Shown one piece after another: positions 54,299 through 61,554 of a stretch of 64,000 bases of DNA. The stretch spans positions 388,403 to 452,402 of the forward strand of contig JAWQFM010000023.1 of the NCBI GenBank assembly GCA_033442325.1, in the 5' to 3' direction. Under the pieces are notes generated by a model. The model was given only the letters and a program-made list of their open reading frames with translations, did no database searches and was not told the DNA's origin. Both the position numbers and the translations under genes were made by a program. The DNA comes from Salpingoeca rosetta. Lineage: Eukaryota; Protista; Choanoflagellata. The stretch's first letter is position 1, and each line of letters begins with the position of its first letter.

Positions 54299-56782
54299 GC
54301 ATGCGCACAATGCGCTCACGCACGCATGCACACAATGCTGCGCGCTCATCATCACTCTCAATCGCCTTAAACTCCCATCAGGACATTTCGTGGGATCACC
54401 GCATTCTGAATGTGTCATCATTCATGCGGATGGAACTTCCAGAGGCCGACGCCTCCCGTGACGAGCGCTTTCTCTCCTCCCTCTTCTCCGCGCCTTGCTG
54501 CAGCCACTGCGGCTGGCACGGCTGCTTGTACGTGGTTGTGTGTTTGTGCGAGTCGTATGAGTGCATAAGATGTGTATGAGGTGTGTATCAGGTGTGTGCG
54601 AGCTATTGTCTCGTGTGCCTCGTGTGCCTCGTGTGCCTCGTGTGCCTCGTGTATCGACGTGTCTTATCGTCAACACATGTGTGCGTGTGCGTGTGCGTGT
54701 GCGGAGCAAGAGTCGGCCTTTGCGTCTTCTCTCATGCCATGACGGTGGCGGTGCTCGTTTCACCCAGGTGTCTCCATTGCAGCCCGTCCTCATCTCGTCC
54801 CGGCACCACCTCCGCCCCAAGCACATCCAGCGCAGCACCCCGCACAAGCACTAGCAGCATAAACGGCCGAGCCAGTTTGTCGGCACAGACCTCGACACAG
54901 CCGTCTTCGTTGTCCACACCCTTGCCACCAACGCCAACACCAACACCAACAACGCAAGCAGCGCAGGCATCCACTGCCCTGAGTGATCCCGCCTCTTCTG
55001 CCGACCCTTCAGCCTTCGCAGGCGGCACCAACGACGACACCAGCAGCGCGACCTCACCTGTGCCACCACCATCGTCACCATCGCCATCACCGTCGCCATC
55101 GAGGCGCGGTGTGCGTCGCCACGGCCTCTGCCGTTTCTGCCACGTTCACCTCCACGACGACGAGGCAAAACGCGAGAGGAAGCGCATCAAGCACATGCGA
55201 GCGGCCCTACGGCAAGCGCGCGCACTCCAGGGCGTGGTGAGCACGTAGTCGTATGTTGTTGTTTGTTGTTTGTTGTTGTTGCTGCTGCTGTTATTGCTGC
55301 TGCTGTTGTTGTTGTTGCTGTGTGGGTGTGGGTGTGCTCTATGTGCTTGCGTCATGGATCTGGCATGCAGATGCCTGGATGGCGTTTGTGCAAACGCTCA
55401 TACCTGTTCACACACACATATATACACAGTTGCGGGAGCACTGGCCTGTGGTGACGCATGCGCTGTCGCAGCGTGTGGTGGAGGAGCAAGAGGTGACGCT
55501 GAAGCGAACCAGCAAGCAGGTCAAGTACCGCGTGCGTGTGCGCGGTGTGCAGGGACGGGTGCGATTGGGACAGCCCTGCGAGACAAGGGCGCGTGCCGAG
55601 CATATGTACACGTTCGAGAAGCGCGTGATCAAGGATGACGACGGAACCGGCGACGCATACCTCGGTATACACAATGTGTTGTGTTGTGTTGTGTTGTGTT
55701 GTGTTGTGTTGTGTTGTGTTGTGTGTTGTGTTGTGTTGTGTTCGTCTGTCCACCTTGTCTTCATGCGTGTGCTGTCCGTGTGTGTTGTGTGCATGCGCTT
55801 GTGAACAGCAGTTAATTGCGTGCTTGCATGCAATGGCCTGTGCAACGTGTGTGCACGTCGAGTTGCATGCATGTACCAGTACCAGAACCAGCACCACCCA
55901 CTCACCTCAGCATCACTTGCTTACGCTGACCATCCCTGATCACCGCCACCACTGCAATTAGTTCGCGGCGCGGATGAGATGTGCATTGCAGACATTGTCG
56001 AGTGCTTGGACAAAATCGCCGGCGTGTCGTTGGCAGACTGGCAGCAGCGGTGCCTGGGGATGTTCGCCCTGCCCATCTCCAGCCCGCCCTGTGTGCAGTG
56101 GCTGAACACCCTGCTGGAGAAACGTGGGTGTGTGGATGTGTTTACGTCGTGCTACCCTAATGCGCAGGCAAGGTTCACCTGCCACGACCAATACAAGAAC
56201 CGCCGCTACGAGAACAAGGGCTCACGCATCGACTACATTGTGCTTGACGGCGACTGGAAGCACCGCGTTGTTTGCTCCCCCGCCGATTTGATTACGTCTC
56301 CGGACTGCCCAAACCCGTTTTGCGCCATGTGTGCGCTTTCCGCAGTCACCTTGAACGGCAGGTCTGTGGGTGGGTGGGTTTGTGTGCTCTGTGTGTGTAT
56401 GAATGTGTGTGCATGCGCGTACTTCTTCACCCGATTTCTTGGGCTCTCAGCATCACTGCGTTGTCAACACACAACAAATATATACTTACTTGCACACACA
56501 CACACACACGCACATGTGTTCTCCCACCTCTCTTCCGCTCCGTTGCTTCCGCTCAGGTGGAAACCGGCACCATTTGACGGGACGGGAATGGTTGCAGGTC
56601 GACAAGAGGTGAGCAATGTGCACTCTACCTGCAGCATCAAGGCTGGCCAGAGCCCCTGTGTGTGGGGGGGGGGAGGGGAAAGGGAACCCTCCCCTTTGGT
56701 CTTTACTGCTACCACACCGGACACAGACACACACACACACACACAGACACGCAAACACACACACACTACCACACCGGACACA

Positions 56783-56868
<86 letters not shown>

Positions 56869-56881
56869 AACACACACACAC

Positions 56882-56954
<73 letters not shown>

Positions 56955-56961
56955 CACACAC

Positions 56962-57033
<72 letters not shown>

Positions 57034-57985
57034 CATCTCACTCAGCGTCGCTACTTGCTGTCAACACCAGGACTACGAGGCGCACATCACGCGCCCGCGG
57101 ACAGGCGTTGTATACACGCCACCGCAGTACTCGGATCACCTCGCCATTGCCGTCGTCCTCGACTTGCCCGCGCTGGCGCCACAGAGGTGTGCCTTGAAGA
57201 AAGAACGAAGGAAAGACAGAGAGGACGCAGGCGTTTTGCGTGTGCGCGTGTGTGTATGTGTGTATGTGTGTGTGTGCGTGTGTGCATGTGTGCATAAATG
57301 TGTGTGTGCATAAATGTGTGTGTGGAGGCAATACCATTTTGTGTGCACTTCTGTTGCAATCACGCACATTCACACGCTTGCTTGCGCCCGGTGCAGGTTG
57401 AGCGGGGACAAGGCAACACGTGGCGCACAGCCGCACACGGCCATCAAGCGAATCAGCAGCTTTTTTTCCAAGCGCGCGAAGCGTCAAGCAACGGCAGATG
57501 GACAAGGTGGACGACCAGGCGACGACGTGGACGCACCCACACACGCCAACACAGTGGATGAGGGCGACGACCAAGCGCAGCAGCGGATTACGGGCGCGGA
57601 GCCAGCGCCCAGCACACCGTCAGCGTTGTTGGCCCCGTGCACGCCAGCACCAGCGATTGCCACCTCAGCTACAACAATCTCAGCACCAGCATCAGCAACG
57701 ACAACACCAGTGGCAACGACAATACCCGGCGCCAGAGCTTCTCTGGACGCAAGCGCCAGCGTCTCGTACTCAAACGACACTCAATCTCCATCACTGTCGT
57801 CATCGTGCTCATCGTCATCCACGTCGTCAGCCATGACGAAGAAAGCCAAAGTGGCCACCGGCACAAAGGCAGTGAAGAGCAAGAAGCCAGCGCCAGCAAA
57901 GCGCAAGAGCAGCAGCTCCAAACAACAAGCAAAGAAGAGTGCACCACCCGGACAGCGCAAGATATCCGCGTTTTACAAGCAGTAA
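51928..57985 (+). CDS. Exonuclease III / AP endonuclease family (APE2-like), multi-exon
   Basis: WNVAGW; DILCLQE|VK; FNGVATF; EG|RAIVT; NVYVPN; VGDFNI; GSRIDY; SDHLAI. C-terminal PIP-box-like QRKISAFY. Confidence 0.9.
53191..53385. repeat. (TATG)n tetranucleotide microsatellite, intronic
   Basis: Directly visible. Confidence 0.9.
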
Positions 57986-58625
57986 TTGGTGTGTATTTGT
58001 CATAGCTAGCTGCCAGTGGGCGAACCTCCAAACACCGCCCATACGCTTCCACTTTGTCACCTGTCCACACTGATTCTTTAAAGATTGAATGCAGAGAGCG
58101 CCACGTGTATTTTAGGGCAAATTGAGAAAGCAATCAAAGACAGAAAGGGGCGAGCATGGGCAGGTGAGGACAAACAGGCAAACGAACACAAGTCACAAAG
58201 CGACAGACCCACATTCACGACAACAGAGCCCACCGTGGAGGGGACGGGGGAAGGGAGGCAAAGCAAGAGCTAGGCCAATAGAGCAAGCAAGCAAGCAAGC
58301 AAACGACAAGCCAGGAGGCAGCCGCAGCATCGCATCATCACGTAAGCATATCAGTTTCGGTCAGTGCAGTAAGATCGCGGCCAAATACAAAGGGGTCTGA
58401 TGGAGAGAATAAAAGGTCATGTCGAAACACGTGAGTGGAAGCTAGCAGTCAGGGGGTGGGCACCTCTGCGAGGAGGAACACCCCCCAAAAAACGAGATCA
58501 GGAGCGCAGCGACCGCGCAAGCAACGAAAAAGGAAGTACCAAGCACACAGACGGTGCAGTGCCAAAAGCTAAAACCAAATGGGAGAGGGAGTGTTGCGCT
58601 TCAAAAGCAATGAATAGAAGTAGAA

Positions 58626-58668
<43 letters not shown>

Positions 58669-58740
58669 ATATGTGTGTGTGTGTTATAAAAGAGGTGGCA
58701 GTGAGTGCAATAGAGAGTGGGGGTGGAGCTTGGTCGTAGC

Positions 58741-61554
58741 CTACTTGGAGGAGCGCTTCTTGTCATCACCAAAAGATGAGCAAAACTGGCGCAGCTCCTC
58801 TGGGGTGAGCTGGCAGTCGAGCTTGTTGGAGCGGACTGACTGCAAAAACTGAATGCGTTCGCAGACGGCCTCCACAAACTTCTGCTCCGACATACTCTCG
58901 CGCTCAATGTTGCTGGCAACGGAGAGTTGGCCCATGGTGAAGCGCTCGTACATTCTGCGACCACGCTCGTTCTTGTTGTGGGACTCGGTGCTCGTTGCGC
59001 GCTGGTTGGCCGCGGCCTGCTCCTGCTGGTCATAAGGGGACTTGGGCGTGTAGTACACGGCGCCAATGTCGAGCGAGTCAGGGTCGGCAACGGCAACGGT
59101 GCGCCCAACGGATTCGTTGTGCTGCCTTGTCGCCTCCTCCCAGGCGAGGAGCGTGTCGGCCCACTCCACACGCTCGCGCTCACGCTCGGCGGCGTTGGCA
59201 TTGGCGCTCGAAGGCTGCGCAGGGGCGTCCACGTGGGGCTGCAGGGGCAGCCTGCGCCTGGCGCGGTGGGCGTTGAGCACCCACACAATGAGGTCAGCGA
59301 TGGCGCGGCGTTGCTTGATGATGATGTCAGCTGGAAGCGGGCGGGACGGCTCGGGACCATGGATGTCAACTTCAAACGGACGGCCTGTCTGGCCAGAGTG
59401 CTGTTGCAACACCCAGGAAAGCATGCAGCACTTGTCGCGGCGCGCAAGGGTGTAGAGTGCGCAGTTGAGGATGAATGCCTTTGGCCGGCTGCTCTTGCCA
59501 CTGGGGGCCGGGACGCCATCGACCTCTGGGAAGACGGCTGCTTCGAGGCGGCTGAACGCGGCCTTGAGCGCCTCACGGCGGCCTCGCTCCCGAGCGTTGT
59601 GGCGCTCACGCTTGTCCCCCTTGGCAGGGGTGCTGTTGCCGGTGCGCAGGGCCTTCTTGGTGACCTGACCGCGCGGTGCGGCCTCCTGCGCAGTGCGCTT
59701 CGCAGACTTGCGTCGCTGCTGCTGCCCCTGCTGCCCAACGCTTGAGGGGCTGCCTGAAGGGTATGGCTGCTGGTGGTGAAGCTGCATGTGCTGCCCCTGC
59801 ACGGGCATGTGATGAAGGCCGCCCTGCTGCTGCTGCTGCTGGTGGGCCACGCTTGAGGACGACATTGAGGGGTGAGTGTGTTGCTCGTCCAGGCGATAGA
59901 ATCCACCAGAGGCGTCGATGCCGAGGGTGGGCCGTCCATCCTCAAATGCGCTCTCGGGGCTGTCAAACAGGGCAGTGATGGTGTCCTCGCTGCCAGTGGA
60001 CGGGTTGCTGGCGCTTGTGGAGGAGGAGAGCCTGCTGCGCATGGGGGACATGGCAAAGTGGGCACTGACGCTGTTGAAGTCCGAGTCCATGGTGTCCAGG
60101 CCGACGCTTTCGGTGGACTGCACGCGCTGGAGCGAAAGCTCGGTCTGAGCCGAATCAGGAGGCAGCATGGAGAAGTTGCTATCAAAGAGGTGCGTGCGGC
60201 GGTCGTCGAACTCCTCGTCGAGGGAATCCAGCAAGGGGTCCGAGCCGTCCATGTTGAGGTCCGAGGGGAAGACGGAGATGTAGTCGTCTGGAATTGGTGA
60301 CGTGGGGGGATGGTCAACTTGAGTCCCAGGCGAGGTAGCACCACTGGAGGAAGCGCTGGACGAGCTGCTGCTGGTGCCGCTGCCGGGGCTTGAGCCAACG
60401 CTGTTGGGAGAAGTGTTGCCTGAGGCAGTGGACGTGCTGGTACCACTGCTAGCGCTGCTGGCACTGGCACTGGCGCTGCTTGAAAAATACTGATTCGGGT
60501 GCTGGTGCTGCTGCTGAAGGGTGGTCATGTAGGATGGCTGGTAAGGCGAAACGCCCGGTGAGGCGCTGTAACGACGCGTGCGGTCTGGGTACATCCCTGG
60601 GGCACCCACCCGATGGCTCTGGGAGCGCTGGTCGTAAGGCTTGGTGGACGGGATGCTGTTGCGTGCCATCCAGGGCGCATGCATCGCGGCCGAGTAAGAG
60701 GGACCGCTCGTGCCGCGCAGAGTCGGGGACTGGTGGGTGGTAGCTGCGCTGCTTGTCGTGGATGAAGGCTGCCGCATGTACATGGGCGGATTATCCATGG
60801 GAGGACTGGGGTACGTGAAGGAGCTTGTGGCGTGGCTCGAGGGGGAGCTTGAGGTTGAGCCGTAGCTCACGCTTGGTGCAGACGGCATGTCCAGCACAAG
60901 AGTGTTGCCGGGGTCGATGAGTGACTCACTGTTATGGTCGGGCAGGGTCAGGCCAGGACTGTCTTCAAGGCGCGCGACAGGCCTGCGGTAGCGAAGGGAG
61001 GTATGGTGGTCATCGTTGTCACCGAGCTTCTTCAGGTGGGCACGCTTCGATTCAAGGGCGGCGTGATCCTCGTTGGAGTCGCCAACCGCGTCCGGAGCGG
61101 TGACATCGTCGATGCTTGGGTAAAGTGTCTCATCAATGGGAGGATGGGCCATGCTTTGGCCTAATGTGTTTGGAGGAAACAGGAAGCAACAAACAAATGG
61201 GTGAGTTGGATTGGATGGATGGAAGAGTTGGATTGGATTGGATTGGATGGATGCTGGCATTACACCGTAACACAGCCAAAAGCAACAGCGACTGGTGCAC
61301 AACATGTATGCAAAGAGGTGGGGGGCGAACGAATCAAGCCAAATCACACACACACACACACTGGGTGCGTGTGACGATCGGTGGTGGTGATTGTTTGTGT
61401 GTTTTGTGGGTGCCCAAACAACAAGGCCTCTGAACAAAGCATCATCATCATCGTGACCGACCGAGCCACGCAATGCAACTTGATCACTGCAACCACGTGG
61501 GTGATCGAGTGCCAACCTACCGAACAGGATGGGGTTTGCGTCTTGGATGTCCAT
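58741..61554 (-). CDS. bHLH transcription factor (Myc/Max/Mlx-like basic region) with a second bHLH-like domain; probably 2 exons (intron ~61162-61520)
   Basis: KRERHNARERGRREALKAAFSRLEAAV...KAFILNCALYTL. Long S/P/Q-rich and acidic N-terminus. Short first exon MDIQDANPILF splices in frame (GTAGGT...TTAG) to GQSMAHPP. Confidence 0.85.
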   Translation of the reverse strand: MDIQDANPILFGRLALDHPRGCSDQVALRGSVGHDDDDALFRGLVVWAPTKHTNNHHHRSSHAPSVCVCVIWLDSFAPHLFAYMLCTSRCCFWLCYGVMPASIQSNPIQLFHPSNPTHPFVCCFLFPPNTLGQSMAHPPIDETLYPSIDDVTAPDAVGDSNEDHAALESKRAHLKKLGDNDDHHTSLRYRRPVARLEDSPGLTLPDHNSESLIDPGNTLVLDMPSAPSVSYGSTSSSPSSHATSSFTYPSPPMDNPPMYMRQPSSTTSSAATTHQSPTLRGTSGPSYSAAMHAPWMARNSIPSTKPYDQRSQSHRVGAPGMYPDRTRRYSASPGVSPYQPSYMTTLQQQHQHPNQYFSSSASASASSASSGTSTSTASGNTSPNSVGSSPGSGTSSSSSSASSSGATSPGTQVDHPPTSPIPDDYISVFPSDLNMDGSDPLLDSLDEEFDDRRTHLFDSNFSMLPPDSAQTELSLQRVQSTESVGLDTMDSDFNSVSAHFAMSPMRSRLSSSTSASNPSTGSEDTITALFDSPESAFEDGRPTLGIDASGGFYRLDEQHTHPSMSSSSVAHQQQQQQGGLHHMPVQGQHMQLHHQQPYPSGSPSSVGQQGQQQRRKSAKRTAQEAAPRGQVTKKALRTGNSTPAKGDKRERHNARERGRREALKAAFSRLEAAVFPEVDGVPAPSGKSSRPKAFILNCALYTLARRDKCCMLSWVLQQHSGQTGRPFEVDIHGPEPSRPLPADIIIKQRRAIADLIVWVLNAHRARRRLPLQPHVDAPAQPSSANANAAERERERVEWADTLLAWEEATRQHNESVGRTVAVADPDSLDIGAVYYTPKSPYDQQEQAAANQRATSTESHNKNERGRRMYERFTMGQLSVASNIERESMSEQKFVEAVCERIQFLQSVRSNKLDCQLTPEELRQFCSSFGDDKKRSSK

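What the first reader, a model, noticed from the sequence alone, without database searches (positions are those of the whole stretch)
58840..59613. Transcription factor with two bHLH domains in one polypeptide
Seen: besides the clear bHLH at ~59445-59613 (HNARERGRR...KAFILNCALYTL), a second copy lies at ~58840-58986 (ESHNKNERGRRMYERFTMGQLSVASNIERESMSEQKFVEAVCERIQFLQ). It keeps the H-N-x-x-E-R-x-R-R basic motif and a helix-2-like 'A.E.I..LQ'. Known: the H/E/R triad specifies CACGTG E-box binding, and bHLH proteins normally dimerise intermolecularly. Inference: this could be a single-chain pseudo-heterodimer independent of Max/Mlx partners, or a bivalent bridge. The ~150-aa linker contains a further unexplained helical region.
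Basis: partly seen in the sequence, partly recalled or inferred. Interest (0 to 1): 0.7.

Follow-up and report, generated by a model that had tools for sequence, protein, structure and literature searches.

The report
Choanoflagellate protein with two bHLH-like domains
A Salpingoeca rosetta transcription-factor gene has one clear DNA-binding bHLH domain and, about 150 residues later, a very divergent second one that a sister gene in the same genome also keeps. Standard domain models do not recognise the second one, so a natural "two-in-one" E-box binder is plausible but unproven.

Summary
The minus-strand gene is Salpingoeca rosetta PTSG_12955 (817 aa). One exon encodes a Pfam-supported bHLH (residues 528-588) and a second segment (737-786) that repeats the exact H-N-x-x-E-R-x-R-R motif. 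A genome-wide control gives about 1e-4 for a second in-frame copy in this gene by chance.

New here: paralogue PTSG_09766 aligns collinearly over both segments. It keeps N-x-x-E-R-x-x-R, a variable loop and 9 of 14 helix-2 positions, and its helix 1 ends in the canonical L-L-P.

A profile of the two second segments has the Pho4 bHLH as its best PDB hit, in register, but at E 0.62. Language-model neighbours of both C-terminal halves are all bHLH clusters, at scores that are leads only.

Against:
- Pfam HLH finds nothing in the second segment of either paralogue, even at E 10.
- Two AlphaFold models were too poor to test the fold or any pairing.
- No relative outside S. rosetta turned up in four protein searches and one metagenome scan.

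I put a real second bHLH at about 0.7 and an intramolecular pseudo-dimer at about 0.3. Two bHLH domains per chain are already known in the C. elegans REF-1 family.

The parts
58741..61160 (-). Last (second) coding exon of PTSG_12955 with its stop codon (58741-58743). It encodes residues 12-817, including both bHLH-like segments and the linker.
   Evidence: Continuous ORF. Annotated protein P0001 is 100% identical. Acceptor AG at 61162-61161.
61521..61554 (-). First coding exon (MDIQDANPILF + first base of Gly12).
   Evidence: ATG at 61554-61552 and donor GT at 61520-61519. Matches the N-terminus of P0001.
61161..61520 (-). Intron 1, 360 nt, GT..AG. Its length is a multiple of three and it has no in-frame stop, so the raw ORF (937 aa) reads through it.
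59431..59613 (-). bHLH 1 (residues 528-588). Basic region with H532/E536/R540, helix 1, a 14-residue loop and helix 2 (PKAFILNCALYTL). No leucine zipper follows.
   Evidence: Pfam PF00010 at 21.9-28.3 bits, cut-off 20.7, profile positions 1-29. Max is the best single-sequence PDB hit. Profile A3 hits BMAL1, Max, NeuroD, ARNT, USF, Cbf1, Pho4, Ino2 and Myc.
59257..59331 (-). Conserved helix in the linker (residues 622-646, ending in the shared R-x-R-[RK]-[RK]-L-P). Function unknown.
   Evidence: Predicted helical in both AlphaFold models at low confidence. Aligned between the paralogues.
58837..58986 (-). Second, divergent bHLH-like segment (residues 737-786). Basic motif with H739/E743/R747, predicted helix 737-760, loop, predicted helix 770-786 (KFVEAVCERIQFLQ).
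   Evidence: Exact H-N-x-x-E-R-x-R-R motif. Conserved in paralogue P0002 residues 365-413. Profile A4 has Pho4 bHLH as top PDB hit, E 0.62. No Pfam match.
58744..58836 (-). C-terminal tail (residues 787-817) with a short helix (TPEELRQF). Partly conserved in the paralogue (8 of 31 positions).

Best explanation
PTSG_12955 is a Salpingoeca rosetta-specific transcription factor of the class-B bHLH kind. It has a long Ser/Gln/acid-rich N-terminal half and two HLH units in its C-terminal 290 residues.

Unit 1 is a recognisable bHLH without a zipper. Unit 2, 148 residues later, is most likely a strongly diverged bHLH that still carries the base-contacting His/Glu/Arg positions.

Inferred, not shown: both basic regions contact E-box-type half-sites. 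Neither unit has a zipper to stabilise an intermolecular dimer, and the linker is far longer than the roughly 50-60 Angstrom path needed. So the two HLH units probably pack against each other within one chain into the usual four-helix bundle, a natural tethered dimer.

My odds: second unit is a true bHLH about 0.7; it binds DNA about 0.5; intramolecular pairing about 0.3.
For: (1) The exact class-B basic motif occurs twice in frame in one exon. The genome-calibrated chance is about 1e-4.

(2) Paralogue PTSG_09766 aligns collinearly over both units (BLASTP E 2e-16, 27% identity).
- Identity, counted from the invariant columns: 24 of 61 positions in unit 1, 28 of 148 in the linker, 13 of 50 in unit 2.
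- The unit 2 identities are concentrated in N-x-x-E-R-x-x-R and in 9 of 14 helix-2 positions, with a 3-residue indel in the loop between them.
- The paralogue's helix 1 ends in L-L-P, as in canonical bHLHs.

(3) Profile A4 of the two second units against 177,635 PDB sequences: the best hit is the Pho4 bHLH (1a0a), aligned from the basic region to the end of helix 2. The E-value is 0.62 for the whole PDB. If only the roughly 200 bHLH sequences I estimate to be in the PDB (my own estimate, not a count) are the prior target, it is about 1e-3.

(4) The ESM-Atlas feature neighbours of the part after unit 1 are exclusively INO4/INO2-type bHLH clusters in both paralogues.

(5) AlphaFold secondary structure in both paralogues is a long helix, short loop, then helix exactly at unit 2.

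(6) Reading the sequence, there is no heptad Leu zipper after either helix 2.
Against: - Pfam HLH, and every other Pfam model, gives no match to unit 2 in either paralogue, even as isolated 51-55 aa pieces at E<=10. Unit 2 is not among the 11 PF00010 candidates in the genome.
- Single-sequence PDB searches find no bHLH. The Pho4 hit is not significant on its own.
- hhalign of unit 2 against unit 1 aligns only the basic region (E 0.012-0.022, probability 2-3.5%).
- In a local rank test, the unit-2 HMM does not lift the S. rosetta bHLH exons above noise.
- Both AlphaFold models have mean pLDDT 41, so neither the fold nor domain pairing can be read. Foldseek finds nothing, not even for unit 1.
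- The language-model scores (0.79-0.80) are in the range the tool calls leads only. They may also carry context from unit 1.
- Helix 1 of unit 2 in PTSG_12955 contains a Gly and lacks the terminal L-x-P.
- No orthologue outside S. rosetta was found, and there is no expression evidence.
Confidence: 0.55

Rival explanations
1. The second segment is not a bHLH. It is a lineage-specific C-terminal helical module, for example a cofactor-binding or oligomerisation motif. Its basic motif and amphipathic helices resemble a bHLH through convergence, or through a partial internal duplication of the basic region only.
For: No Pfam match in either paralogue. hhalign to unit 1 covers only the basic region. 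The unit-2 HMM does not single out other S. rosetta bHLHs. The only bHLH hit in the PDB is at E 0.62. Any amphipathic helix pair gives the i, i+3, i+7 pattern seen in helix 2.
Against: The six-residue motif has a genome-calibrated chance of about 1e-4. The paralogue conserves exactly the Asn/Glu/Arg/Arg positions and the helix-2 block, and adds the canonical L-L-P. The top PDB hit and all language-model neighbours are bHLHs rather than random families.
Confidence: 0.3
2. Both units are true HLH domains, but they pair between chains rather than within one. Unit 1 of one molecule pairs with unit 1 or unit 2 of another. This would give a homodimer with two DNA-binding heads that bridges two E-boxes, or open-ended oligomers. 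Alternatively, unit 2 acts as an Id-like intramolecular inhibitor of unit 1.
For: Same evidence as for a real second bHLH. REF-1 family proteins with two bHLH domains are discussed in the literature as homodimeric binders (PMC3606163). The long, partly helical linker would allow either geometry.
Against: Nothing here discriminates inter- from intramolecular pairing. An Id-like role fits poorly with the conserved Glu/Arg of the unit 2 basic region in both paralogues.
Confidence: 0.12
3. Gene-model artefact: the two segments are not in the same mature protein, because of an unannotated intron or two separate genes.
For: The genome does have in-frame introns: intron 1 of this gene reads through as ORF.
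Against: There is one uninterrupted 806-codon exon in the public model. The paralogue has the same two segments in one uninterrupted ORF and one annotated protein.
Confidence: 0.03

Closest known systems
REF-1 family of Caenorhabditis elegans (REF-1, HLH-25 to HLH-29)
   Same: Defined by two bHLH domains in a single polypeptide (Alper and Kenyon 2001, as cited in PMC4683635 and PMC3606163). It is lineage-restricted and paralogous, and one of the two domains is much more divergent than the other.
   Different: REF-1 proteins are HES/E(spl)-like, and only one domain resembles HES. The S. rosetta proteins have class-B (Max/Myc/Pho4-type) H-E-R basic regions. They are not detectably related to any nematode protein: the exhaustive phmmer search found no hit at E<=0.001. 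They occur in a unicellular relative of animals, so the origin is independent.
Class-B bHLH proteins that read CACGTG (Max, Myc, USF, Pho4, Cbf1)
   Same: The basic-region pattern H-N-x-x-E-R-x-R-R is present in both units. It corresponds to Max His28/Glu32/Arg36, which is established structural knowledge (PDB 1an2, 1hlo). Max is the best single-sequence PDB match of unit 1. Pho4 is the best profile match of unit 2.
   Different: No leucine zipper follows either helix 2. The loop of unit 1 is long. Helix 2 of unit 1 is not matched by the Pfam model (profile positions 1-29 only). Two units share one chain instead of one.
Engineered tethered bHLH dimers such as MyoD~E47 (Neuhold and Wold 1993; cited in PMC7003098; details from my own knowledge)
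   Same: They show that two bHLH units joined by a flexible linker can fold as an intramolecular dimer and bind an E-box without a free partner. This is the mechanism proposed here.
   Different: They are artificial constructs with short designed linkers. Here the linker is 148 residues (111 in the paralogue) and contains a conserved helix. Intramolecular pairing is not shown.
Fungal INO2/INO4 small bHLH proteins (PF23181, PF23179)
   Same: They are the nearest clusters by language-model features to the post-unit-1 part of both paralogues.
   Different: There is no HMM match: PF23181 finds nothing in the genome and hmmscan finds nothing. The scores of 0.79-0.80 are leads only.

Membership tests
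bHLH (Pfam PF00010), unit 1 (residues 528-588) | Profile match above the curated gathering score | tested here: met
   21.9 to 28.3 bits against a cut-off of 20.7. 27.3 bits in the genome scan. The paralogue's unit 1 scores 22-26.9 bits.
bHLH (Pfam PF00010), unit 2 (residues 737-786) | Profile match above the curated gathering score, or any match at relaxed threshold | tested here: not met
   No family at E<=10 for pieces of 119, 93 or 55 aa, nor for the paralogue's pieces of 93 and 51 aa. Unit 2 is absent from the 11 PF00010 candidates in the genome.
bHLH, unit 2 | Basic region with the DNA-contacting Glu and Arg (and His for class B) at the canonical spacing | tested here: met
   H739, E743, R744, R746 and R747 in PTSG_12955. 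K371, E375, R376 and R379 in PTSG_09766. Chance of the exact motif is about 1e-4.
bHLH, unit 2 | Two amphipathic helices separated by a variable loop, folding as an HLH | tested here: inconclusive
   AlphaFold secondary structure gives helix 737-760, loop, helix 770-786, and helices 365-395 and 399-413 in the paralogue. Mean pLDDT is 41. Foldseek was uninformative even for unit 1.
bHLH, unit 2 | Detectable sequence homology to solved bHLH domains | tested here: inconclusive
   The two-sequence profile has Pho4 (1a0a) as top hit, in register, E 0.62. Single sequences find nothing.
bHLH, either unit | Dimeric four-helix bundle and E-box binding | not testable with these tools
   No multimer or DNA modelling is available, and there are no binding data.
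bHLH-Zip (Myc/Max/Mad/USF/MITF/SREBP) | Heptad leucine zipper continuous with helix 2 | tested here: not met
   Reading the sequence: after L583 the heptad positions 590 and 597 are Cys and Gln. After unit 2 the chain has a Pro within 16 residues.
REF-1 family (C. elegans two-bHLH proteins) | Sequence relatedness to REF-1/HES-type bHLH domains | tested here: not met
   Exhaustive phmmer of residues 515-817 against 1.84 billion representatives found only the protein itself at E<=0.001. The basic regions are class-B type, not HES type. Only the architecture is shared.

The most novel reading that the evidence does not exclude
PTSG_12955 and PTSG_09766 are natural single-chain bHLH pseudo-dimers. 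The two HLH units of one polypeptide form the four-helix bundle, and the two basic regions grip the two halves of an E-box-like site. The factor would then need no Max-type partner. This would be an independently evolved, partner-free solution to obligate bHLH dimerisation in the closest unicellular relatives of animals.
Probability: 0.3. Interest if true: 0.65.

Novelty: new variant of a known kind. Interest (0 to 1): 0.45.

Why it matters
bHLH factors are textbook obligate dimers, and choice of partner is the core of their regulatory logic (the Myc/Max/Mxd network, E-proteins, Id). A natural protein that carries both halves of the dimer in one chain would show how that logic can be bypassed. 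It would also give an experimentally tractable case, since S. rosetta is transformable and amenable to CRISPR.

The only described precedent, the nematode REF-1 family, is unrelated and its binding mode remains unsettled. A second, independent origin in a choanoflagellate would show that the architecture is recurrent.

A practical point follows as well. The second domain is invisible to Pfam, so catalogues of transcription-factor repertoires in unicellular holozoans count this protein as an ordinary single-bHLH protein.

Tried and rejected
**RNA evidence**

**Searches for relatives beyond the two S. rosetta paralogues (all blank)**
- Word search with residues 480-817 of PTSG_12955.
- Exhaustive phmmer of residues 515-817.
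- Word search with the paralogue's C-terminal 260 aa at E<=10.
- Profile of both paralogues at E<=10.
- Metagenome contigs.

**Pfam**
- Nothing for unit 2 at E<=10, including short excised pieces.
- PF23181 (bHLH_INO4) found nothing in the genome scan.

**Profile and rank tests**
- A home-made HMM of basic region plus helix 1, built from five other S. rosetta bHLH exons, had no power. It gave 10 bits to unit 1 and missed the paralogue's unit 1, so I discarded it as a test.
- A unit-2 HMM run against about 470,000 aa of six-frame S. rosetta background ranked unit 1 only around tenth among the non-self hits, in register but within noise.
- hhalign of unit 2 against unit 1 aligned only the basic region.

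**Structure**
- Two AlphaFold runs with a two-sequence alignment both gave mean pLDDT 41.
- Foldseek against the PDB found nothing at E<=0.001, and the positive control (unit 1) also failed.
- The Atlas structure neighbours were meaningless, with TM below 0.4.

**Other ideas**
- Possible autoregulatory E-boxes near the gene: CACGTG is common in the window and even under-represented there, so I dropped this.
- No paper mentions PTSG_12955 or PTSG_09766.
- The plant reports of "two bHLH domains" refer to bHLH-MYC_N plus bHLH, not two bHLH domains.

**Exon joining**
The spliced protein used is the database record returned.
Full report
**What is there**

The window comes from Salpingoeca rosetta. 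The minus-strand ORF 58741-61554 matches the public protein PTSG_12955 (P0001, 817 aa, "BHLH domain-containing protein") at 100% identity over its last 338 residues.

The public model differs from the raw ORF only by one intron, 61161-61520. It has GT..AG ends, is 360 nt long, lies in frame and contains no stop. Everything from residue 12 to the stop lies in one exon (58741-61160).

The N-terminal 500 residues are Ser-, Gln- and acid-rich low complexity.
- Unit 1 is residues 528-588 (window 59431-59613).
- Unit 2 is residues 737-786 (window 58837-58986).

**Unit 1 is a genuine bHLH**

- Pfam HLH scores it 21.9-28.3 bits against a cut-off of 20.7, although only over the basic region and helix 1.
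- Max is its best single-sequence match in the PDB.
- A three-sequence profile (A3) gives 36 PDB matches, of which 34 are bHLH chains (BMAL1, Max, NeuroD, ARNT, USF, Cbf1, Pho4, Ino2, Myc). The best E-value is 0.001.
- H532, E536 and R540 stand where Max has His28, Glu32 and Arg36, the CACGTG-reading triad. That correspondence is established structural knowledge.
- No leucine zipper follows helix 2 (reading).

**Is unit 2 more than chance?**

The nine-residue pattern H-N-x-x-E-R-x-R-R recurs exactly. I calibrated its rarity on the organism's own genome. The degenerate DNA pattern for it occurs 14 times in 55.4 Mb on both strands, against 11 for the reversed control. That is about 1e-7 per start position, or about 8e-5 for a second in-frame copy in an 817-codon gene.

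Three of the 14 hits are in bHLH genes, and two of those three are in this one gene. A real chance instance exists in L016, but it is followed by a microsatellite and has no helix pattern.

**Independent evidence from a paralogue**

A six-frame search of the genome with the part after unit 1 found a second locus on contig 31 (E 7.6e-7). It lies directly downstream of another PF00010 hit. This is PTSG_09766 (P0002, 447 aa).

The two C-terminal regions align collinearly (BLASTP E 2e-16, 27% identity). From the invariant columns, identity by region is:

| Region | Identical positions |
|---|---|
| Unit 1 | 24 of 61 |
| Linker | 28 of 148 |
| Unit 2 | 13 of 50 |
| Tail | 8 of 31 |

Within unit 2 the identities fall in two blocks:
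- N-x-x-E-R-x-x-R in the basic region.
- 9 of 14 positions in helix 2 (K-x-x-E-A-x-C-E-R-x-x-F-L-Q).

A three-residue length difference sits in the loop between the blocks. The paralogue's helix 1 ends in L-L-P, the canonical end of bHLH helix 1. This is the conservation pattern expected of a constrained helix-loop-helix with a DNA-contacting basic arm.

**Further support, all below formal significance**

- The profile of the two second units (A4), searched against all 177,635 distinct PDB sequences, returns three hits at E<=10. The best is the Pho4 bHLH (1a0a), aligned from the basic region through the loop to the final L-Q of helix 2 (E 0.62).
- bHLH chains are roughly a thousandth of the PDB by my own estimate. 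A chance hit of that score being a bHLH in register therefore has a probability of about 1e-3.
- The ESM-Atlas feature search with the part after unit 1 returns only INO4/INO2-type bHLH clusters for both paralogues (0.80 and 0.79). The tool calls such scores leads only. I cannot exclude that the embedding of a part carries context from unit 1.
- AlphaFold secondary structure places a long helix, a short loop and a second helix exactly on unit 2 in both proteins.

**Evidence against**

- Pfam finds nothing in unit 2 of either paralogue at E<=10, whether in context or as excised pieces of 51-119 aa. Unit 2 is not among the 11 PF00010 candidates of the genome scan.
- Single-sequence PDB searches are blank.
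- hhalign of unit 2 against unit 1 aligns only the basic region (E 0.012-0.022, probability 2-3.5%).
- A unit-2 HMM run against about 470,000 aa of S. rosetta six-frame background, which included the other bHLH exons, does not lift any bHLH above noise.
- Both AlphaFold models have mean pLDDT 41. Foldseek on one of them finds nothing and does not even recognise unit 1. The fold criterion is therefore untestable here rather than failed.

**Relatives elsewhere**

None were found. The searches were:
- two word-index searches;
- an exhaustive phmmer against 1.84 billion representatives;
- a two-sequence profile search;
- a metagenome scan.

Each returned only the S. rosetta proteins. The databases carry EukProt records, as the source labels show. 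Whether other choanoflagellate transcriptomes are among them was not shown here.

A 60-residue domain at 30-40% identity would fall below the thresholds of such large searches. So this shows fast divergence or lineage restriction, not proven absence.

**Mechanism**

Shown:
- Two basic-helix-loop-helix-like units lie in one exon and one annotated protein.
- Both units keep the Glu and Arg that contact DNA, in both paralogues.
- Neither unit has a zipper.
- A 148-residue linker (111 in the paralogue) contains one conserved helix (residues 622-646).

Inferred:
- The protein binds E-box-type sites.
- Zipper-less HLH units dimerise weakly, and the linker easily spans the distance from the end of helix 2 of one unit to the start of the basic arm of the other. 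The simplest model is therefore an intramolecular four-helix bundle, a natural analogue of engineered tethered bHLH dimers.
- Intermolecular pairing (bivalent bridging or oligomers) and an Id-like autoinhibitory role for unit 2 remain open. The autoinhibitory role fits poorly with the conserved basic region.

**Comparison with what is known**

Two bHLH domains in one polypeptide define the C. elegans REF-1 family (PMC4683635, PMC3606163, citing Alper and Kenyon 2001). The architecture is therefore not new in kind. The S. rosetta pair shares only the architecture:
- Its basic regions are class-B type, not HES type.
- It has no detectable sequence relation to any other protein.
- It sits in a unicellular holozoan.

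I classify it as a new variant of a known kind, conditional on unit 2 being a real bHLH (about 0.7).

**Limits**

The spliced protein used is the database record.

Noticed in passing
L002:1776-2945 (-), = G000:C31:496775-497944; also L008 (G000:C25:581800-582450) and L009 (G000:C34:381200-381900): A third bHLH-like subfamily (basic region T-E-Q-x-R-R-D-A-I, helix 2 C-x-V-Y-A-F-T-K). One gene lies tail-to-tail next to paralogue PTSG_09766. Pfam gives no hit for the 389-aa ORF and 19.3 bits, below cut-off, for the other copies. Even so it aligns with unit 1, and that alignment's profile hits PDB bHLHs. The C25 and C34 copies are 100% identical over 647 nt, which suggests a recent duplication or assembly redundancy. 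They are 83% identical to the C31 gene. No unit 2 was found in these genes.
   Followed up: partly
window 61161-61520 (-): Intron 1 of the gene is 360 nt, a multiple of three, with no in-frame stop. Retaining it would insert 120 residues without breaking the frame, and the raw ORF (937 aa) reads straight through it.
   Followed up: no
window 55979-57985 (+): The convergent neighbour gene looks, by eye only, like an endonuclease/exonuclease/phosphatase-type nuclease. Its last ORF ends in Q-R-K-I-S-A-F-Y, which resembles a PCNA-interacting (PIP) box and suggests an APE2-like repair nuclease. Long (CA)n/(TG)n tracts at about 56600-57050 inflate spurious ORFs on both strands.
   Followed up: no
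window 58615-58670: An (AGT)n/(GTA)n trinucleotide microsatellite followed by (TG)n lies about 70-125 nt downstream of the stop codon, in the presumed 3' UTR or intergenic spacer.
   Followed up: no
whole window: The E-box CACGTG occurs 53 times in 64 kb. Dinucleotide-preserving shuffles give 87 +/- 8.7, and all 100 shuffles had at least 53, so the palindrome is under-represented here.
   Followed up: no
L006 (G000:C6:2043593-2043736, -): The only PF00010 hit in the genome scan that covers both helices in a single exon (profile positions 6-53, 21.6 bits). It is followed by a heptad-like stretch, so it may be a Mad/Mnt-like bHLH-Zip.
   Followed up: no
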